From: Octopus sinensis
Lineage: Eukaryota
Reading direction: 5' to 3'
NCBI RefSeq assembly: GCF_006345805.1
Contig: NC_043012.1
Span: 16,802,001-16,866,000, forward strand
Length of the DNA stretch: 64,000 bases
Shown here piece after piece: positions 1,899 through 60,016 of the stretch (its first letter is position 1; each line of letters begins with the position of its first letter). The translations under genes were made by a program, and so were the position numbers. The notes beneath the pieces are model-generated. The model had not been told where the DNA came from, made no database searches, and saw only the letters and a list, made by a program, of their open reading frames with translations.

Positions 1899-2745
1899 TC
1901 TATATATATAAAACTGTATGTGTGTGAGTGTCTGTCTCCTACGATTTAGATTCCTAACTACTCCCACATTTTGCGATGCAGTTTAACCAAAACCGGGTAT
2001 CTTATAGTCGTGATTCATATCGAGCCCTTCTGGGTATTAGCGCGCGTCTATGATGTGTCTACGATTTTAAAAATAATTTACCATCATTTTTTTCCATTTT
2101 AATGCATATTTTTTTTAATAAAGGGAAGTAACACTCAAACTTCACACCAATATGCGTGCTCATATGCGACGTAATATCACATCAGCAGCATTTCCTCACA
2201 CCCTCCTTGCACTTGGCGAAGGCAAAATACCAGGGTATGAAAATGGTAATATTGCCATCGATTCCATTTGTACCATTGTTAAGACGCCTCCTGATCTCAG
2301 AGATGCAGTGTTCCCAGATCTACAAGCTAATTATCAGAATATGGATTGGATTGGCAAAAAGGCTATACTGGCCCCGAGGAATAAAACTGTTCACCATATT
2401 AATGATGAAATGCTAAAACTCATTCCTGGGGAAGTCTATGTATATCAGTCTATCGATACAACTCCTGACCCAGAGGACGTCATCAACTATCCAATAGAGG
2501 TACTCAATTCCTTTGAGCACCCCGGACTACCACCACACTTTCTCAAACTTAAAGTTGGTGCCCCTATAATGCTCATCAGAAATTTGGTTCCCCCAAAACA
2601 ATGCAATGGCACACGTTTGATCGTTAAGTCCTTATCTCCCACCGTAAACTTATATCAATATTTGCCTGGATAATCATCATAATTCAGTGCAATCATTAAT
2701 ACTTCAAGCAATTCAGCCCCGAGCAACGCCGGGCAATTCTGCTAG
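1899..2745 (+). mobile_element. Non-autonomous Helitron carrying a helicase fragment
   Basis: 5' TC at 1899 after A; 3' hairpin CCCGAGCAACGCCGGG then CTAG (2742-2745) followed by T; 5' ~210 bp shared with 49609-50081. Confidence 0.88.
2152..2673 (+). pseudogene. PIF1-family (Helitron RepHel) helicase fragment
   Basis: ORF contains KAILAPRN, YPIEVLNS..HPGLPPH.LKLKVGAPIMLIRNL and CNGTRL, typical of Helitron PIF1 helicases; truncated at both ends. Confidence 0.9.
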
Positions 2746-2805: not shown

Positions 2806-3170
2806 AGCTGAAGTTGTCTGGATATATGTATGTATGTATGTGTGTGTGTATACGTATGTATGTGTAGAGACCTCTTTTGGCTCCACCTGAGTTTTGAAAC
2901 TGAATGGGTAAATTTCCCCCTAACTATAGAGCCTTATTGTTCTGTTGAGGAACAATGTTGTTTTATTCAACCGATGGCCTTCCCAACATTTGATTGATGT
3001 ATTTTCCTCTTGACCCATAACCCTTCTAGTTTGTAAAGGGTTTAAATAAATAATATAAGGGATCTTACCCTTTCAACGGCAGATCGAGAAATATATTTTT
3101 TGTAACTAAACACTTTCAACCTTCGGACACTAACCCTAACCCTAATGTGTCCTATAAAACATTTTTACTT
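2795..3170 (+). mobile_element. Probable Helitron 5' fragment
   Basis: Begins ATATAAGCTGAAGTTGTCTG, like the 5' end of the Helitron at 10020-10419; no 3' end seen. Confidence 0.4.
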
Positions 3171-3810
3171 TTAATGTTACTCTTGACCGCGGCATGCTGG
3201 AGCATCGCCTTTAATCGAGCAATTCGACCCCGGGACTTATTCTTTTTGTAAGCCCAGTACTTATTCTATCCTTAGCCAATCATATTGTCTGTTTTCATTT
3301 GAAATTATTAGCTGCATAGTGTTAATGTGACGTAGATAGCTATTTTGTGAGTGGGTAAGCAGTAAGCAAACAGCTGTGGTAGATGTGGTTATCATGGCAG
3401 TGGTGGTAGTGGTGACAGTGGATGTGTATAATGGCAGCAATTATAGTGTTGGTGTTTTTGTAGAGGTGGTGGTGGTGGCGGCAGTGGATGATGATGATAA
3501 TGATGATGATAGTAGTAGTAGTAGCATTGATTATGTTAGGATGTCTCATGGATGGTAGTGTTGGTGTGTGTGTGTGTGTGTGTATGTATGGATCAAAACA
3601 GTTTGATTCAAATTCTGTGGTTCTTATATATTCATACATATATACATGTAGATGTATATAACATATATATATTGTATGTAAACATCTTTTATATATATAT
3701 ATATATATATAATGTATGCATCTATAATACACACACATTATAAATATATACACATATATGCATATGCATTAGAATATGTGTATAGGTGTATATATATATA
3801 TATATACAGT

Positions 3811-4264
3811 AAAACTACAGTAGCATCCACCCTTAGGGGTTAGCCATATTGAAATGGCAAAAATACGTCACGATGTGTTACCGCTACTGTATATAACTCA
3901 CTTTGATATTTATCATTGTTTGATTTCACTTTTTCAATATCAGCGACAGTGGACGCTGGAAAAAGTATAAGTATTTGTGAAGGAAATCTAATTCTCGGCG
4001 ACAACTATGATTGTCACACGCTGACGAGAGGTCAATACCTCGAAACTCGAGTCCGTGTGTATCATAAGTTGAAGACGGGAAGGATGACTTCCTTTTGCAA
4101 ATACTGACAGGACACAGATAGTGTGTCTATGGCCAGCTGAGAGTGTGTCCTCCTGGGGCTAAAAACTACAGTAGCATCCACCCTTGGGGTTAGCCATATT
4201 GAAATGGCAAAAATACGTCACGATGTGTTACCGCTACTGTATATAACTCACTTTGATATTTATC

Positions 4265-4267
<3 letters not shown>
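3811..4267 (+). mobile_element. Retrozyme-like element: 351-bp unit plus 106-bp repeat of its start, flanked by (TA)n
   Basis: Direct repeats 3811-3917 and 4162-4267 differ by a 1-nt indel; canonical HHR in the single-copy part; many hairpins. Confidence 0.8.
4006..4066 (+). ncRNA. Type I hammerhead ribozyme with canonical core; predicted cleavage after C4053 (GUC)
   Basis: TATGAT-TGT-CACACG CTGACGA GAGGT-CAAT-ACCTC GAA ACTCGAGT C CGTGTG-T-ATCATA: stem I 6+6 bp with internal loop, 5-bp stem II, palindromic stem III. Confidence 0.93.
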
Positions 4268-4317
<50 letters not shown>

Positions 4318-4604
4318 TGCATATGTTTTATACATGTGTGTGTAGCTATTTAGGATCTACACAAATTTATATATACTCCACGAAGTTTATGATAAGCGGA
4401 GATGTCTACATTTTAGTTAGCTATTACATGTTTACGTTAACTACGTCACAAAATAGCTGTTTACGTCACAGTAACAATATTTTGAGAGGCAGTAAATAAT
4501 ATGAGGCTGAAAGAAAGAATATCATTGGTTAAAATTCGAATTATTAAACAACGTTAAACTTAGAAATTACAATTCCGTTTTCATTTTGGTTTACAATGAA
4601 AAGA

Positions 4605-4745
4605 TCCACCAAGGATCTACTCACAAGGCTTTGGTCGGTCCGAGGCTATTGTAGAAGACACTTGCCCAAGGTGTCACGCAGTGGGACTGAACCCGGAACC
4701 ATGTGGTTCGTAAGCAAGCTACTTACCACACGGCTACTCCAGCTC
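4605..4745 (-). mobile_element. SINE family A, 5' half
   Basis: Reverse complement of the head/core seen at 14654. Confidence 0.8.
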
Positions 4746-5519
4746 ATGTTTAGTGAGGGAAACAAATTTAGCGCTCATGGTTTGTGTATTCTGTCGAGAA
4801 GAAAACAATTTTATGCTATTGTTAATCCTTCTTCATTCGAACAAAGAAAATAGATTCGACCACCCCGTGAAAAGACAAAATATCATCTATACTGTTTCAT
4901 CCAATAGAAGAAAATCTTGTAGAAAATAGAGGAATAATTAAAATAGAGCTCCAAGTTCTATGCTAATGGTTTAGGAAAATGTTTCGGAGGAACATGAATG
5001 GTGAGATATTCTCCACAGAATTCTTCACTGCGTAAATTTTTTAGCAACTCAAAAAATCTTGCACTGCATGTTCAAAAGGAATCCCATAGCCATAAAGGAG
5101 AAAGCAACTGCTGAGAAATTCTTTCAGATGCGGTGTTATTAAAATAATCAGGAAACTTTGATCCGCTAAAAAAACAAAAACAAAAAAAAAAAAAAAACAA
5201 TCACTGCAATGTAGCAAAGAACTGAAGACGAATATCCATATTTATGTCAGTTAGTGTAGAATTATTGTATTGAGCTGCTGAAGGCTTCAACTGTTCACCA
5301 GATATTACTACTTAATATTCATAAGGTCAAATATTTTGACCCTTTGTTTGATTCAACTGCAAATAAAGCACATCAATAGAAATAGCATAAACAGTTGTTA
5401 TGTTGGTATTGATTTTAAGAAAACAATTTTATAAAAGAGTCTTTTCTTGGGTTTATCCAATGAAAACGAAAGGATGCTGGAAATATGGTGAAAGTAAGAT
5501 TGGAACTACTTGCAGCAGC

Positions 5520-7205: not shown

Positions 7206-7894
7206 CACGAATATCTTGATATCATAGCGAAGTTTTGTGCAAAGCATGCATGGTTGACGATTAAAATCAAACCAACGATACAAAAGATAATGCAAAGCAG
7301 TCGCTGAATTTAATCACGACTTTAATCTCTGTGTGTTGCTTGGATGTTAAAATATAATTCCTGTTTGATGGCCTGGGCTTAAAAACGATTACATGATAAT
7401 ACAAAGAGCTTGTATTTAAAACCCTTTAAAGACTTTTTTTAAGCAGCCGAAAATGATTGATCTATGATTCTCTTGAAGCTGGGCTGAAGGTGTTCGATTA
7501 ATGGGATGTTCAAACGGAAAAACATCGAAGGAAGAAGTTACAAAGAAGGAATGAAAATGCTAAGGGATGGGGGACTGACGGGCAGGTGCCCGCCCACCTC
7601 AAGGAAAGAAGTGTACCCGTCTAAATAATGTTATATTATTCCGTGTTGTGCACATGAATGAGGAAAGGCTCCCAAAACCACTGATTTTCTCCTGGAATTG
7701 TATTCCCTTCTGATCTTGTGCCCTCCCTTTGAAAAATTCCTGGGACCAGCCCTGTTATACAAATGGAGAAATAATGGAAGAAACTATTTCGTTGTTGTAT
7801 TTGGCTTGCAAGATTCGAATGTGAACTGTATGTATGTATGTATGTATGTATGTATGTATGTATGTATGTATGTATGTATGCATGCATGCATGCA

Positions 7895-8165
7895 TGCATA
7901 CATGCTTCAACACTTTTACCAAAAATGTTTAAGAAGAATCCTAAACTTCAAATAGCAACAGAAAATACCTGACACACAAATCCTTTTTGATGTTGGCTGC
8001 ACGAACATTGAATCTACCATCATTTCCTCTCAAATGCGTCGGGTAGGCCGTGTTGTGCACATGAATGACGAAAGGCTCCCAAAACAACTGATTTACAGTC
8101 AATTGCACACTGGGAAACGCTCTCAGCACAAACCAAGGAAAAGATATAAAGATTGCATAAAAAAC
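7895..8165 (+). mobile_element. RTE-clade LINE fragment (post-RT region)
   Basis: Translates to QKCLRRILNFK...MRRVGRVVHMNDERLPKQLIYSQLHTGKRSQHKPRKRYKDCIK; short duplicate near 7640-7690. Confidence 0.85.
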
Positions 8166-8779
8166 AAACAACAACAACCTTGTTACACATTCATATCTAT
8201 GTGTTTGCGTATGCCAAACTACATCCCCACTCTTGGCACTATTTTGTTAGTGAACAGTACAAACTGTGTGTAAAATATATAATGTATTACTACACTGAAT
8301 ATCGTCGTCCGTGTATCATGAATAGAAAATAAACACGTAACAATAAGAATGGTTTTCATTTGGTTGTCTATCCCATTAGAACCCAGAACTACGCGTAACA
8401 AACCTTAAAGATTTTCATTTTGAAGATCAGAACTGGGAAGTGCTTCCTTTAAAGAAGGGTAAATGTGAAGGAAAGCTGCAGAATATTTGAAGAGAGATGT
8501 CTTGGTCATGAAAAACTTAAACGCCAGCTTCGAAAAATCCACAGTATGAATATCACTAAGAACATCTTGAACTGGATTTGTGAGGTGTGTGGGTCATTTA
8601 CTGCTCTCTAAATCTGGGTACCCCACTCACTTAAAATCACATAAAAAAACCAACTGTGTGCAGCCCTGTCCCTCCAATGCTAGGTGAGACAACATGTGTG
8701 GTGTGCAAAAAGATCTGCAAATCAATACCTGGTCTTAAAAGGCATATGAGGGTGCATAAGGATGACATCCCACAAGTTT

Positions 8780-21856: not shown

Positions 21857-21925
21857 GGAGTAAACACATAAATGTGAAACAAGGTGGAAAAAAGAGTACT
21901 CAAATACCAGTGGTAGAGTAATATG

Positions 21926-22083
21926 CTTTATTTTAAGCAGCAGAAAATTCAACAAAATCTGTTACTCTGAGTTTCTCGTTGCCGTTCATCAGACAGTTTT
22001 TGCTAGAAAAAACTGTCTGATGAACGGCAACGAGAAACTCAGAGTAACAGATTTTGTTGAATTTTCTGCTGCTTAAAATAAAG
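21926..22083. repeat. 158-bp near-perfect palindrome within a Penelope-like element
   Basis: 79-bp arms centred on CTAG (22003-22006) with a single mismatch (22002/22007). Confidence 0.95.
22013..22050 (+). ncRNA. Minimal type I hammerhead motif (mirror copy at 21959-21996, minus strand)
   Basis: CTGT CTGATGA ACG-GCAA-CGA GAA ACTC-A-GAGT A ACAG; GUA site; A-A mismatch at 10.1-11.1. Confidence 0.72.
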
Positions 22084-22107
22084 TATATGTATATATATAT
22101 ATATTTC

Positions 22108-31170: not shown

Positions 31171-31634
31171 AAGAATGGTTCTTAGAAAATCATTTACAAC
31201 AATAATAATGATTAATATTATAATAATTATAATAACGTAAAATATTATAATGTTACATTGCATTTCGAGATAAATTTAGTTTTTACTGTTTATTTTTAAT
31301 CCTCAATCAATAGTGTATTCTCTGTCATTGTTCATGACTTTTAGCCAGTGTTTCACTAACTTGTTAATGTCATGATGGTAGAAATTGCCAGGTCGTTTAC
31401 TTGAAAAGTTCATTGAGCCACATTTTCAGCTCCATGTCAGTGTTGAATGAAATGCTTTGCACACTGTTGGAGAGTGACCAAAAAAGGTGATAATCTGAAG
31501 GTGCTATATATCAGGAGGATATGGTAGGTGTGGTAGAACTTTCTAACCAAGCTCTTGAATGGCATGTTTGGGAAAATTAGTGACATGGGAGTGAGCATTG
31601 TTGTGTTGAAGAAGCTTGCCGTATCACTGGTCAG

Positions 31635-32140
31635 CTCCTTCCTCTACCAGGGTTCCACAGTCACCAACAATGGAGACCTGACCCCAGAGACCAACTATAG
31701 ATGTGGTCTGGCCACTGGGGTATTTACTCTCTATGGAAGCCCCTTTGGTACCACTGCTCTATCTCCTGGGAAGACAAAGCTCTGCATCTACAATGCATCA
31801 GCACTCTCCATTTTCCTCTGTGGAGCAGAAATGTGGCCCCTCTCAAAGACCATGGCAAAGAGGATTGACAGCTTCAATAGCAAAGCTCTGGGAACACTCA
31901 AGAACATCAGATGGTACCATCACGTTTCCAACCAAAAAAACTGTGTGCATGCACACAACAGCCTGCAGCCTCCCATCTCATAGCTACCCACCACATGTGC
32001 TGGTACAGACATATCCTCTCTCTCCTGGTGGATCACCCTACCAGTGTTTTATTCTCAATTGACACAGGAGCTGTAGGCTGAGAAATGGCCTCATAGTAGG
32101 CCCTGCACAAGATGGCAGGATGTGATTGGGGATCTCCAGA
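31635..32140 (+). mobile_element. RTE-clade LINE fragment
   Basis: FLYQGSTVTNNGDL...TKLCIYNASALSIFLCGAEMW...IRWYHHVSN. Confidence 0.82.
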
Positions 32141-35415: not shown

Positions 35416-35589
35416 GATATATATATATAAAACCTCAGAGCTCTTATGGTACCTGTCTGTAAAATTTATCCCTCTATACTCATTGTACATACATGCATGC
35501 GTACATATATACATACATACAAATATACACACATATATGGTGGTTGTCTACTCCTTATACAGAGTTTGACCACCTCCTGTACCTACACC

Positions 35590-36280
35590 TTAGCACCATC
35601 ATGGTGTCTGATGTGGCTTTTTAAACCCAGACAATATTCTGAAAAGACACCACATAGATTGCACCTCTGATTTGGACCACCAATACCTGTAGATAAGTTC
35701 TGCTCTTTGTGGATCTTAACATGTCTTTTGAGTCCTCCGTTGGATTTCCCAACCTTCTGGCATACACTGCATTCAAAAGTGTGCACAGACATATAGGCAG
35801 AATAGTTGGTGGAGGTTCATTTTTCATGCGTTCGCCCATGAGAATTGAGGCCAGCCAAAGACAGGCATAGTTTGTCACCGACTGTGCACACAAAAAGGTC
35901 ATTGTCAATCACCTTCTCAATCATTCCATTCTTCCTTAGATCTCTTTTGAGTCTTACTTACATTATCTTGGTCTCTCCAAATGCTTTTACTCCACTCCAC
36001 ACTTTTGTTCACCATCCAACTCGATCTGAAGCAAGGGTTTCTATATCTTCTGGGACCATTCCAAGTAACTTCATAGTAGTCCTTATGCCGTCCTTAAACC
36101 TTTTTTTAGATTTACGCTGATAGCTTTTTCCCTCTGCAAGCTCACCAAAAATAGCTGTTTCAGCATGCGTTCATCTGCTATTCGAACAATATGGCCACAC
36201 CATCTCAAATGATTCCTTAAAATCATAGCTTTAATTGAGGGGATGCCTGCAGATGCAAGGACATCTGTGTTTGGAGTAAA
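35590..36280 (-). mobile_element. RTE (BovB-like) LINE 3' fragment with C2H2-like zinc fingers
   Basis: AGIPSIKAMILRNHLRWCGHIVRIADERMLKQL, then FECSVCQKVGKSNGGLKRHVKIH and CNLC...LKSHIRHH. Confidence 0.82.
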
Positions 36281-36929
36281 AGGACATACATACATACATA
36301 GTAAAATCTCTCTGTTTCCGTCAACCAAACCCACTCACAAGGCTTTGGTTAGCCTTAGGTTATAGTAGAAGACACTTGCCCAAGTGTGTGCATGTGTGTG
36401 TGTAGTTGTGGTTGTATAGATACAGTTATGCGTTATTGATGTAACAAAACAAATCTGGGAAATTGGAAAAAATATTTATCAGTCATTTTCTGGGACCAAC
36501 ATTATGACACTCCTTTGTTTCATATGTGTAGCCTTGTACCCAACAAGAGAAATTATTATTTCTATCATTGGTGTGATGATGATGATGATGATCATTATAT
36601 CACTATCAATATGAACATCATCACTACTATTCTGTTACAGAATTGAAGCTTACGGATTTTGACAAAATCTACAGCGTTTATTGACAAACAGGATTTTACC
36701 CAGCAAAGAGAGAAACAAATGCTGTCCTTTATTTGCTTTGGTACAAACAGACTATGTCCTATTGTCTTAATGAGGTCCTGTTTGTTTGGTTTTATATAAA
36801 GCAGCATTTTGACAAGTTATTTCAATAGTTTTCTTTGATTCATGCTGTCATAAACTAGAGCATGTTTATATTTAAAAACTTTGTTCTTTGTGTAATTTTC
36901 ACATAATAATAATAATATAATAATAATAG

Positions 36930-37442
36930 GCACACACCAGAAAAGGTAACAGAAAACGAGAAAGCAACCATACTCTGGGATATGCCGATACACACAGATA
37001 GAGAAATTAAGGCCAACAGACCAGATATAGTTGTCAGAGATCATGAAGAAAAAAAATGCTTTCTAATTGATGTATCAATACCGGCAGATGACAACGTGTC
37101 TCTAAAAGAAATGGAGAAACTCTCAAAATACAAAGACCTGGAAATAGAGGTAACTAGAATGTGGAATCTGAAAACAGAAACAATTCCTATCATAGTAGGT
37201 GCATTAGGCATGATAAAAAAATATTCAGACAAATACATAACAAAAACACCAGGACTTACAAACATACAGGACTTACATAACATACAGAAAATTGCACTAC
37301 TAGGCACTGCACACATCCTACGCAGAACACTTTCCATACAATAACCATCAGAGCATCACAACAAATCACAGCACATACCCAAGGCACACAGAGCTGCGCT
37401 CGGTAGTGAAGTGAAAGCACGCTATAAAAATAAAACTACTGA
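36930..37442 (+). mobile_element. R4/Dong-like non-LTR retrotransposon 3' end (restriction-like endonuclease) in (TAA)n
   Basis: ORF 36982-37344 has RPDIVV..IDVSIP..EKLSKYKDL..GALG..QKIALLGTAHILRR; short 3' UTR; TAA repeats on both sides. Confidence 0.88.
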
Positions 37443-42977: not shown

Positions 42978-43495
42978 TAATTACATACATACATTACATA
43001 TATATTCATGCATTCATATATATACATACACACATTACATATATATACATAATTTTACATATATACATACATTACATACATATTCATACATTCACACATA
43101 TGTACACACACACACACACATACATAAATACGCACATATCCATACATACATACATACATACATACATTTTATATACATTCACACATACATACACATGCAT
43201 ATATACACACATACATGCACACATACATACATACACACATACATTATATACACATGCATACGTATACACACACACATACATACACACATACATACACACA
43301 TACATGCACATACATACTTAAACACACATGCATACATACACACACATGCATACATACATACATACACACATACATACACACACATGCATACACACATACA
43401 TACATACATACACACACATACATACTTAAACACACATACATACATACAGACACACATACATACACACATACATACACACACTATATACATTACAT
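42600..43495. repeat. Long compound (CATA)/(CA)/(TA) microsatellite
   Basis: Direct reading; a similar tract lies at 54420-54712. Confidence 0.9.
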
Positions 43496-55955: not shown

Positions 55956-56058
55956 ATGTGTTTGTTGTTGTTGATGTTTTCGCATTATAGACAGACAGAC
56001 AGACATTGTAATATCGATATTCTTTCTCTTATGTTTCAGTGGTAGCCACGCTGAAAAG

Positions 56059-56290
56059 ATGTCCAGCGAAGTGAATAACTCCGATACCCCCTGCGCCGGC
56101 CTGGATGAATGGCCTGGCCAGATGATACATCAGGCAGCCATCTACAACAACAGTGAGTTGATGCAGTGTCTACTGGAAGGAGACGAGTTGGCAAATGTTA
56201 ACCAATTAGATAGCAGTGGTCGGACAGCTGTCTATACTGCAGTGACAAATAATAGTGTTGATTGTCTCAAATGGCTCATACATTATGGAG
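56059..56290 (+). CDS. Coding exon of an ankyrin-repeat protein, probably the N-terminus of an LRRK-like kinase
   Basis: Acceptor TTTCAG at 56039, donor GTAAAT at 56291 (phase 1); DEWPGQMIHQAAIYNNSELMQCLLEG...DSSGRTAVYTAV is ankyrin-like and resembles, from memory, the insect Lrrk N-terminus. The frame is also open upstream of the ATG to the acceptor. Confidence 0.85.
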
Positions 56291-56532
56291 GTAAATAATG
56301 TCCAGCAAATTTGCTGCTTAGCTTTCCATTTTTTTATGGTTTTCATCTTTTTTTTTTCTTTTTATTACTTTTGTGTTTTGGTTTGCATGTTTTTCTTTTC
56401 TCAGTTTTGCTGCTACAGTCTGTGACCTGACAACTTGACTCATTAGATAATTAATTCTCTCATTATTGAAATTTAGTTTGTGCCTCTCTTTTATGCTCTC
56501 CCCATTGAATAGATATAGAACATAGTAAGTAT

Positions 56533-58862: not shown

Positions 58863-59703
58863 TATATTAAATTAGAGATAAAACCACTATTAGGCAAATC
58901 ATACAATGAAAAACTTAAGCCAATACATAAGATTAATTAATTTATATTATTTTAAATATATATCAAAATTATTAAAAAAAGATATATATATATATATATA
59001 TATATCTGTTTGTTCGTCTCTCCACCATTGCTTGACAACCGATGTTGGTGTGTTTATATCCCCGTAACTTAGCGGTTTGGCAAAAGAGACCGATGGAATA
59101 AGTACTAGGCTTGCAAAGGATAAGTCCAGGGATCGATTTCTTTGATTAAAAGGTGGTGCTCCAGCATGGCCACAGTCAAAATGACTGAAACAAGTAAAAG
59201 GATAAAAGAATTCCACAAATTTTTTTTTGTTTTGTTTAGTATTGTTAAAAAAAAAATAAAAAATGGCTCTCGTCCACGTCTTCTTTTTTTTTTTGAGTTT
59301 TGAGTTGGTAGACCATTGAAAAATTAGAGACAACATTGATGGTGTGAAGTTTAAGAAGTTGTTTTATTGATTGGTTTTTGCGTTTCAGAAAGACAATGAA
59401 GTTTATATATAGATAGCAGATTCTGATAGACAGTCTAAAGTGTAATGGCGGAAGAGAGACACGGAGTGGATATTCTAATATCTCTTTGCGTGCTCACAGA
59501 CCATCGAAAGTCAAAGCAAACATTGATGGTGTGATGGAAAGAATCTTCGTTTACTGACTGATTTTTAAGTCTTGCAGAGAGAAGTCTGCACATTTATTTC
59601 TGTGTGCATATGTGTATATATGTGTGTGTGATAAATATATATATATGAATACACACACATGCATATATAAGTATTTATATATTTATTTAAGCACACATGT
59701 GCA

Positions 59704-59752
<49 letters not shown>

Positions 59753-59792
59753 ATATACACACTCACACGCAAATATTTACATATGTATGTGC

Positions 59793-59823
<31 letters not shown>

Positions 59824-60016
59824 GTGTAGATATAAACGTACATATGTTTGTACATATTTGCATGTGTATACATACATACACACACATATATATATGTATG
59901 TATACAAATGTACATATGTATGTACGTATTTGCATGTGTGTGTGTGTGTAATATATATATATATATAAGCCTGCATATTTTTACACACATGTATATACAT
60001 ATACACATTACATATA

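What the first reader, a model, noticed from the sequence alone, without database searches (positions are those of the whole stretch)
3811..4267. Candidate cephalopod retrozyme: a canonical hammerhead ribozyme in a 351-nt unit copied 1.3 times
Seen: every HHR core nucleotide is present (CUGACGA, GAAA, GUC at 4051-4053). Stem I is 6+6 bp with an internal loop, stem II is 5 bp with a tetraloop, and stem III is the perfect palindrome ACUCGAGU. The motif lies in a non-coding 351-bp unit whose first 106-107 bp recur at the end, inserted in (TA)n. Known: metazoan non-LTR retrozymes are short tandem units with type I HHRs and palindromic stem III, and they produce circRNAs; a stem I loop contacting loop II gives fast cleavage. 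Inference: this copy was made by reverse transcription going 1.3 times round a ~351-nt circular RNA, probably using Penelope-like machinery. I do not know of a described octopus example but cannot check the literature.
Basis: partly seen in the sequence, partly recalled or inferred. Interest (0 to 1): 0.92.

Follow-up and report, generated by a model that had tools for sequence, protein, structure and literature searches.

The report
Solo hammerhead-ribozyme retroelement copy in octopus
A 458-bp non-coding insertion in what is very probably an octopus genome carries one complete, textbook self-cleaving hammerhead ribozyme in 1.3 copies of a ~350-nt unit; it looks like a stray single copy of the known "retrozyme" kind of mobile element, which is interesting but not a new kind of thing.

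Summary
Window 3810-4267 (+) is 1.3 head-to-tail copies of a ~350-nt non-coding unit set in (TA)n. It carries one complete type I hammerhead: Rfam RF00163 at 4015-4059, 32.2 bits against a gathering score of 34, E 4.6e-6. All 19 stem pairs are Watson-Crick and cleavage is predicted after C4053. The architecture is the canonical metazoan one, not the minimal Penelope type. As a circle the unit folds far better than shuffles (z -5.3). Two ribozyme copies are predicted to form a double hammerhead through the ACUCGAGU palindrome. Repeats shared with Octopus bimaculoides support an octopod origin.

Size, GC content, lack of coding and ribozyme type all fit a metazoan non-LTR retrozyme. A template longer than one unit, circular or multimeric, is the simplest origin. 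However, this locus has a single ribozyme, so it cannot release a unit-length RNA. I found no second copy, tandem array or Penelope gene in the window or in 82 kb of octopus DNA, and no tool here could search a cephalopod genome. Circular RNA and cleavage remain untested.

Hammerhead_1 hits are already counted in a squid genome. I class this as a new member of a known kind, of moderate interest.

The parts
3810..4267 (+). Whole insertion: 1.3 head-to-tail copies of a ~350-nt non-coding unit
   Evidence: The repeat period is 350/351. There is no other copy in the 64-kb window.
3810..4159 (+). Complete unit (copy 1), 41.9% GC; no reading frame over 66 codons even when circularised
   Evidence: Six-frame protein searches gave no real relatives.
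4160..4267 (+). Partial second copy (108 nt), repeating 3810-3917. It ends before the ribozyme.
   Evidence: The alignment shows two 1-nt indels (A-run TAAAAC versus TAAAAAC; CCCTTAGGGG versus CCCTTGGGG) and no substitutions.
4006..4066 (+). Type I hammerhead ribozyme including the extended helix I. The Rfam match covers 4015-4059.
   Evidence: RF00163, 32.2 bits, E 4.6e-6, model 1-45 of 45; all pairs Watson-Crick; not chance.
4021..4027 (+). Catalytic core box CUGACGA
4028..4041 (+). Helix II, 5 bp (GAGGU/ACCUC), with loop CAAU
4042..4053 (+). GAAA box, then helix III (A4045-U4052, C4046-G4051, palindromic loop UCGA), then GUC. Predicted cleavage is after C4053.
   Evidence: The ACUCGAGU duplex between two copies is -12.1 kcal/mol, whereas the hairpin alone is 0.
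3789..3806 (.). Upstream (TA)n at the insertion site, followed by CAG (3807-3809) of unclear origin
4268..4330 (.). Downstream (TA)n at the insertion site

Best explanation
This is a single, fairly young retro-inserted copy of a hammerhead-bearing, non-coding, non-autonomous element of the metazoan non-LTR retrozyme kind, in an octopod genome.

Shown:
- One intact canonical type I hammerhead lies in a ~350-nt, low-GC, non-coding unit.
- The unit is predicted to fold as a compact, highly paired circle, with helix I extending into the closing rod.
- The unit is present 1.3 times.
- It sits inside (TA)n.

Inferred:
- Elsewhere in the genome a master locus, probably a tandem of such units, is transcribed. 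The hammerheads pair through the palindromic helix III as a double hammerhead and cut out unit-length RNA, which a host ligase circularises.
- A reverse transcriptase primed at a nick in a (TA)n tract copied more than one unit. It started at unit position ~108 and ran 1.3 turns round a circle, or along an uncut multimer. The enzyme was most likely from a Penelope-like element, whose endonuclease prefers such microsatellites.
- The product was integrated.

Consequence at this locus: with only one ribozyme, it cannot release a unit-length RNA. At most, a read-through transcript would be cut once after C4053. The copy is probably inert.
For: - The hammerhead is real.
- Its architecture equals the published canonical metazoan type I definition in PMC4209133: helix I 6 bp, helix II 4-5 bp, helix III 2 bp with a 4-nt palindromic loop.
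- Unit size and GC match published retrozymes. Here they are 350 nt and 41.9% GC; published values are ~300 bp with GC under 45%, and mussel units are 350-390 bp (PMC7229834).
- The unit is non-coding.
- The circular fold is -108.3 kcal/mol against -80.4 +/- 5.3 for shuffles, z -5.3.
- Cofolding two ribozyme copies gives the double hammerhead as the minimum-energy structure: -47.1 against 2 x -21.2.
- The insertion ends (3810, 4267) and the unit junction (4159/4160) are all away from the cleavage site at 4053/4054. The template was therefore continuous across that site.
- Penelope-like elements are reported to prefer (TA)n and to form partial tandems (PMC8557442).
- Retrozymes are reported to be derivatives and partners of Penelope-like elements (bioRxiv 10.64898/2026.07.22.740005; PMC7761336).
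- The two overlapping 108-nt parts differ by only two indels, while the flanking SINE copies differ from one another by 8-27%. The insertion is therefore comparatively recent.
- Octopod origin.
Against: - Only one locus is known.
- There is no second copy or other hammerhead in the 64-kb window or in 82 kb of O. bimaculoides and O. sinensis DNA.
- Scans of viral, metagenome and prokaryote collections found nothing.
- No open reading frame from other copies appears in 5.8 billion predicted proteins.
- The defining tandem of ribozyme-bearing units is absent here.
- The window has no Penelope RT or GIY-YIG domain.
- No target-site duplication can be read in the microsatellite.
- Cleavage, expression and circles are all untested.
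- The Rfam score is 1.8 bits under the gathering cut-off.
Confidence: 0.6

Rival explanations
1. It is the terminal piece (pseudo-LTR region) of an autonomous Penelope-like element. On this reading it is a heavily 5'-truncated copy whose partial tandem was made by the element's own integration mechanism, not a separate non-autonomous family.
For: Penelope-like elements carry hammerheads in their pseudo-LTRs, insert as partial tandems, are often 5'-truncated and favour (TA)n (PMC8557442; PMC4209133). Xenopus retrozymes are sister to pseudo-LTRs.
Against: No RT or GIY-YIG domain occurs in any non-SINE reading frame of 75 codons or more in the window. The insertion is bounded directly by microsatellite, and the unit shows no trace of an ORF end. 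The ribozyme has the canonical architecture with helix III and a long helix I. Metazoan Penelope hammerheads are described as minimal variants with helix II of 7-8 bp, helix I of 4-5 bp and no helix III.
Confidence: 0.2
2. It is a remnant of a DNA-level tandem (satellite) array, or a local segmental duplication made by slippage or unequal crossing-over. No retrotransposition event of 1.3 units took place.
For: Hammerhead-bearing units were first described as satellite DNA. Arrays grow and shrink by unequal crossing-over (discussion of the 2026 preprint). Microsatellite flanks are recombination-prone.
Against: The block has clean edges against (TA)n on both sides. There are no degenerate further units nearby. 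The two overlapping parts are nearly identical. The block lies inside a SINE-rich region with no satellite context.
Confidence: 0.1
3. It is an endogenised DNA copy of an exogenous viroid-like, satellite-like or delta-like circular RNA with a hammerhead, captured by a host reverse transcriptase. It would not be a genome-resident retroelement family.
For: The size (~350 nt), the compact predicted circular fold and the more-than-unit-length copy are also what such agents would leave behind. Hammerhead-bearing delta-like circles exist in invertebrates (PMC7936874, listed).
Against: There is a ribozyme on one strand only, and no coding capacity for a delta-antigen-like protein. The ribozyme is of the genome-typical metazoan type I form.
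Confidence: 0.05
4. The hammerhead-like motif is a chance resemblance in a duplicated stretch of junk DNA.
For: The score is below Rfam's gathering cut-off. There is no covariation evidence, because no homologues were found.
Against: The core pattern is expected 0.01 times per window. The full descriptor gave 0 hits in 300 simulated windows. All 13 core positions and all 19 stem pairs are intact, and E is 4.6e-6.
Confidence: 0.02

Closest known systems
Metazoan non-LTR retrozymes (Cervera & de la Pena, NAR 2020, PMC7229834), especially the Mytilus galloprovincialis units of 350-390 bp
   Same: It shares the canonical type I hammerhead with a 2-bp helix III capped by a palindromic tetraloop. 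It also shares the ~350-nt non-coding unit, GC below 45%, a predicted highly self-paired circular RNA, a head-to-tail copy longer than one unit, and a mollusc host.
   Different: Only 1.3 units with a single ribozyme are present here, whereas the published elements are dimers to large multimers with a ribozyme in each unit. Copy number, expression and circularity are unknown. There is no detectable sequence similarity to anything I could retrieve.
Pseudo-LTR hammerheads of Penelope-like elements (Cervera & de la Pena 2014, PMC4209133; Craig et al. 2021, PMC8557442)
   Same: Both have a type I topology, probably act as dimers through a palindromic helix III region, form partial tandems and insert into (TA)n.
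   Different: No RT/GIY-YIG gene is attached or nearby. The ribozyme is canonical (helix I 6+6 bp, helix II 5 bp, helix III present) rather than the minimal variant.
Newt and salamander satellite 2 / axolotl retrozymes (~330-350 bp)
   Same: The unit length is similar, helix III is weak and palindromic, and double-hammerhead cleavage is predicted.
   Different: Those occur in huge tandem arrays of up to ~120,000 motifs in vertebrates. This is an isolated copy in a mollusc, with a 2-bp rather than 1-bp helix III.
Plant LTR retrozymes (PMC4918200)
   Same: Both are non-autonomous, make circular RNA intermediates through hammerheads, and have terminal direct repeats.
   Different: The plant elements have type III ribozymes, true LTRs, a primer-binding site and polypurine tract, GC above 55% and Ty3-Gypsy partners. 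None of these applies here.

Membership tests
Hammerhead ribozyme, type I (Rfam RF00163) | Conserved core: CUGANGA, GAAA, and a cleavage triplet NUH | tested here: met
   CUGACGA 4021-4027, GAAA 4042-4045, GUC 4051-4053
Hammerhead ribozyme, type I (Rfam RF00163) | Three helices around the core, with helix I open (5' and 3' ends in helix I) | tested here: met
   Full-length alignment to the model, with no non-canonical pair flagged; 19 Watson-Crick pairs
Hammerhead ribozyme, type I (Rfam RF00163) | Score at or above Rfam's gathering cut-off (34 bits) | tested here: not met
   32.2 bits, E 4.6e-6 in a 701-nt scan. Absent from the gathering scan and lost to the filters in the whole-window E-value scan.
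Hammerhead ribozyme, type I (Rfam RF00163) | Self-cleavage at the predicted site | not testable with these tools
   Needs in vitro transcription
Canonical metazoan type I hammerhead (definition in PMC4209133) | Helix I ~6 bp, helix II ~4 bp, helix III 1-2 bp capped by a 2-4 nt palindromic loop | tested here: met
   Helix I is 6 bp, then an internal loop, then 6 bp. Helix II is 5 bp. Helix III is 2 bp plus UCGA (definition read).
Canonical metazoan type I hammerhead (definition in PMC4209133) | Conserved loop 1 / loop 2 nucleotides for the tertiary contact | tested here: inconclusive
   An internal loop (UGU/U) sits 6 bp from the core and loop 2 reads (U)CAAU(A), aligned by Rfam to the consensus CAAAUA. 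I had no reference alignment to score the contact. Published mussel hammerheads lack most of these nucleotides.
Metazoan non-LTR retrozyme | Short tandem repeat with a type I hammerhead in each unit, at least two consecutive units | tested here: not met
   1.3 units with one ribozyme. The second copy ends at unit position 108, and the ribozyme starts near position 197.
Metazoan non-LTR retrozyme | Unit of ~170-400 bp, GC below 45-50%, no coding capacity | tested here: met
   350 nt, 41.9% GC. Longest frame is 66 codons. No true protein relatives.
Metazoan non-LTR retrozyme | Multiple dispersed or tandem copies in the genome | tested here: inconclusive
   None in the window, in 82 kb of octopus loci or in the collections available. 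No cephalopod genome could be searched.
Metazoan non-LTR retrozyme | RNA predicted to be highly self-paired and expressed as a circular RNA | tested here: inconclusive
   The predicted circular fold has z -5.3 and 62% of bases paired. Expression and circularity are not testable here.
Metazoan non-LTR retrozyme | Co-occurrence with Penelope-like elements in the same genome | not tested
   No Penelope domain in the window. The literature reports such elements in cephalopods (PMC8557442, PMC6962438).
Penelope-like element pseudo-LTR | Flanks an ORF encoding RT plus GIY-YIG endonuclease | tested here: not met
   No RVT or GIY-YIG Pfam hit in the window's non-SINE frames of 75 codons or more. Microsatellite and SINE fragments adjoin the insertion.
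Penelope-like element pseudo-LTR | Minimal hammerhead variant (long helix II, short helix I, no helix III) | tested here: not met
   Canonical architecture
Penelope-like element pseudo-LTR | Partial tandem structure and insertion in microsatellite such as (TA)n | tested here: met
   habit described in PMC8557442
tRNA-derived SINE | tRNA-like head with an internal Pol III promoter | tested here: not met
   ARAGORN finds nothing in 3100-4800. No tRNA or other small-RNA family appears in the Rfam scan of 3700-4400.
Plant LTR retrozyme | Type III hammerheads in true LTRs | tested here: not met
   The ribozyme is type I and occurs once, outside the 108-nt terminal redundancy

The most novel reading that the evidence does not exclude
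This copy is the footprint of a still-active octopod family of retrozymes. Such a family would produce abundant ~350-nt circular RNAs with a fast, canonical hammerhead in cephalopod tissues and would spread into (TA)n tracts by rolling-circle reverse transcription. It would be the first such family characterised in cephalopods. It could also contribute to the unusual non-coding RNA landscape of the octopus.
Probability: 0.3. Interest if true: 0.45.

Novelty: new member of a known kind. Interest (0 to 1): 0.33.

Why it matters
If the family exists in multiple copies and is expressed, it would extend ribozyme-driven circular-RNA retroelements to cephalopods. The 1.3-unit copy has both ends mapped, so it is a clean example of the more-than-unit-length cDNA that the rolling-circle model predicts. 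The published model rests mostly on tandem arrays, where the ends are hard to see. As a single inert copy it has no evident effect on the host. Practically, it also shows that a good hammerhead can fall just under Rfam's cut-off and be missed by whole-window scans.

Tried and rejected
1. Other copies by DNA pattern.
- Viral contigs gave 0 hits for both a hammerhead pattern and a non-ribozyme 34-mer.
- Metagenome contigs gave 3 hits. All are chance matches, without helix I or II and with no similarity to the unit.
- Genome contigs gave 0 hits twice.
- None of these collections is a cephalopod genome.

2. Other copies through called ORFs.
- Exact look-ups of the 63-aa and 54-aa frames found nothing.
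- All six stop-free frames of the circularised unit, concatenated as one query against 5.8 billion proteins, gave no hit.
- An exhaustive HMMER search with the 66-aa frame gave 10 weak hits, best E 1.4e-8. These are bacterial PKD/Ig-repeat surface proteins, and the score is summed over many weak repeat matches. The best single BLASTP alignment is 25.8 bits. I rejected them as spurious.

3. Sampling octopus DNA.
- Four loci around Pif1-like genes of O. bimaculoides and O. sinensis (82 kb) contain no copy of the unit and no hammerhead. The two pattern hits there have no stems.

4. Species identification from the ankyrin exon gave no protein hit. Exact look-ups of two window ORFs also found nothing. 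The Pif1 fragment and shared repeats gave the taxon instead.

5. A literature search for the SINE sequence string found nothing.

6. A second ribozyme on the minus strand: none found.

7. A possible miRNA (mir-980/745) at 21970 is only a long perfect palindrome that matches dozens of hairpin models on both strands.

8. The 35-nt inverted repeat 3316-3350/4446-4480 as ends of a DNA transposon carrying the element: the arms do not coincide with the SINE break points, and no other copy exists in the window. This is left unexplained.

Full report
**Observation.**
- Hammerhead core boxes: CUGACGA lies at 4021-4027, GAAA at 4042-4045 and GUC at 4051-4053.
- Helix I: the six bases before the first box (CACACG, 4015-4020) are the exact complement of the six after the cleavage triplet (CGUGUG, 4054-4059). 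A small internal loop follows (UGU 4012-4014 opposite U4060), then a further six pairs (4006-4011/4061-4066).
- Helix II is GAGGU/ACCUC with loop CAAU.
- Helix III is two pairs (A4045-U4052, C4046-G4051) closing the palindromic loop UCGA.
- A base-by-base check found 19 Watson-Crick pairs and no mismatch.

**Rfam result.** Rfam's type I hammerhead model aligns over its whole length (positions 1-45) to 4015-4059. The score is 32.2 bits with E 4.6e-6 for a 701-nt scan. This is 1.8 bits under the curated cut-off of 34, so the gathering-threshold scan of the window is empty. The whole-window E-value scan also loses it to the speed filters.

**Chance.** Chance can be excluded. The core pattern occurs once, against 0.01 expected from shuffles. 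A descriptor that also demands helices I and II occurs once in the window and never in 300 simulated 64-kb windows. No ribozyme of any Rfam family lies on the minus strand.

**Repeat structure.** The repeat structure is also real.
- The block runs from T3810 to T4267 (458 bp): one full unit (3810-4159) followed by the first 108 nt again (4160-4267).
- The two overlapping parts differ only by two single-base indels.
- (TA)n tracts abut both ends.
- Three bases (CAG, 3807-3809) at the left junction are of unclear origin.
- The block occurs once in the window.

**What the unit is like.**
- It is 41.9% GC.
- Even when circularised it has no open frame longer than 66 codons.
- Folded as a circle it reaches -108.3 kcal/mol, against -80.4 +/- 5.3 for dinucleotide-preserving shuffles (z -5.3, 0 of 120 shuffles as stable). 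In that fold 62% of bases are paired and helix I continues into the long closing stem.
- Helix III alone is not stable in the nearest-neighbour model (0 kcal/mol). The ACUCGAGU palindrome of two copies forms a -12.1 kcal/mol duplex.
- The minimum-energy cofold of two ribozyme copies is exactly the double hammerhead, with helices I and II intact and an 8-bp intermolecular helix III: -47.1 against 2 x -21.2 kcal/mol.

**Surroundings.**
- The window is a repeat-rich animal sequence. A ~380-bp SINE occurs some twenty times.
- Two collinear fragments of one SINE copy (3183-3270 and 4605-4740) bracket a 1335-bp stretch that replaces the SINE's middle. That stretch contains microsatellites, a 35-nt inverted repeat and the hammerhead block.
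- A Pif1-like (Helitron-type) helicase fragment lies at 2122-2670.
- Among non-SINE frames of 75 codons or more, Pfam finds only Pif1_2B, one C2H2 finger and an ankyrin exon. It finds no reverse transcriptase and no GIY-YIG nuclease.
- So no autonomous Penelope-like element is attached to the block or present in the window.

**Taxon.**
- The best named relatives of the Pif1 fragment are from Octopus sinensis, O. bimaculoides and the cuttlefish Acanthosepion pharaonis.
- A 20-kb locus of O. bimaculoides chromosome CM046604.1 shares the Helitron piece at 87% nucleotide identity and also the SINE family.
- An octopod origin is therefore well supported. The exact species is not settled.

**Search for relatives.** This is the weak point.
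- None of the DNA collections on hand contains cephalopod genomes.
- Pattern scans found nothing related.
- Protein-level tricks, using exact ORF look-ups and a concatenated six-frame query, found nothing.
- The exhaustive HMMER search returned only bacterial Ig/PKD-repeat proteins, whose scores are sums of many weak repeat matches. I reject these as spurious.
- The 82 kb of octopus DNA that I could pull in around Pif1-like genes holds no copy of the unit and no hammerhead.
- Copy number, tandem arrays, permuted junctions and covariation therefore remain untested.

**Mechanism.** The published definition of the canonical metazoan type I hammerhead is helix I of 6 bp, helix II of 4 bp and helix III of 1-2 bp capped by a 2-4-nt palindromic loop, often acting as a dimer in tandem repeats (PMC4209133). 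This motif fits it exactly. It does not fit the minimal variants of metazoan Penelope pseudo-LTRs, which have helix II of 7-8 bp, helix I of 4-5 bp and no helix III.

The unit matches metazoan non-LTR retrozymes in size, GC content, lack of coding and predicted self-pairing. Published units are ~300 bp with GC under 45%, and mussel units are 350-390 bp (PMC7229834).

Neither end of the block nor the unit junction coincides with the cleavage site. A linear monomer released by the ribozyme could give this product only through internal initiation, an end-to-end template jump and internal termination. A circle, or an uncut multimer, gives it in one pass. That is the published model: reverse transcription of a circular template yields cDNAs longer than one unit (PMC7761336).

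Insertion into (TA)n and partial tandems are documented habits of Penelope-like elements (PMC8557442). These elements are the proposed partners and ancestors of animal retrozymes.

I therefore read the block as a solo retro-copy of a retrozyme-type element, made from a template longer than one unit.
- Confidence that it is a retro-copy of this kind is about 0.6.
- Confidence that the template was specifically a circle is about 0.35-0.4.
- The locus itself has one ribozyme, so it cannot release unit-length RNA and is probably inert.

**Rivals.** In order of weight:
- A truncated Penelope terminus (0.2).
- A DNA-level array remnant or duplication (0.1).
- An endogenised exogenous viroid-like circle (0.05).
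- Chance (0.02).

**Novelty.** The held literature contains no description of a cephalopod retrozyme. However, the giant squid genome paper already counts 235 Hammerhead_1 hits and annotates Penelope elements (PMC6962438). Molluscan retrozymes are also characterised, in the mussel. This is therefore a new member of a known kind. I give 0.33, rising to about 0.45 if an active, expressed octopus family were shown.

Noticed in passing
window 21908-22091: A near-perfect ~180-nt palindrome. The central 91 nt folds at -75.8 kcal/mol (z -18). It matches dozens of unrelated miRNA models on both strands, including mir-980 at 44.9 bits against a cut-off of 47. It looks like a foldback or inverted-repeat element rather than a specific miRNA gene.
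   Followed up: partly
window 3183-3270 and 4605-4740: Two collinear fragments of one ~380-bp SINE family, which has about 20 copies in the window. They bracket a 1335-bp stretch that replaces the SINE's middle part, including its internal CA/TA microsatellite. The hammerhead block lies inside this stretch. It may therefore have entered a SINE-borne microsatellite, but the extra unique sequence (3271-3560, 4340-4604) is unexplained.
   Followed up: partly
window 3316-3350 and 4446-4480: A 35-nt inverted repeat, 89% complementary, with arms 1.1 kb apart around the microsatellites and the hammerhead block. There are no other copies in the window, and the arms do not coincide with the SINE break points. 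Its origin is unknown.
   Followed up: partly
window 2122-2670 (+): A Pif1-like helicase fragment (Pfam Pif1_2B, E 2.5e-15), presumably a Helitron remnant. It is 87% identical in DNA to a copy on O. bimaculoides chromosome CM046604.1. Its best protein relatives are from octopuses and a cuttlefish.
   Followed up: yes
window 55975-56295 (+): An open frame with ankyrin repeats (Pfam Ank_2, E 1.3e-8) that begins with a methionine, so it may be the first coding exon of a host gene. The word-indexed protein search found no relative at all, which is odd if octopus proteomes are in that database.
   Followed up: partly
window 7956-8270, 31537-31980, 35586-36334 (-), 36916-37341: Frames that by eye resemble decayed non-LTR (LINE-type) retrotransposon tails, plus one weak C2H2 finger hit. 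Pfam recognised no reverse transcriptase domain in them.
   Followed up: partly
whole window (for example 7830-7902, 43170-43240, 59600-60000): Dozens of sub-threshold Rfam hits to mir-297, mir-466, mir-3149 and mir-1277 fall on TA/TG microsatellites and appear on both strands. They are composition artefacts. In the same scan the real hammerhead was dropped by the filters.
   Followed up: no
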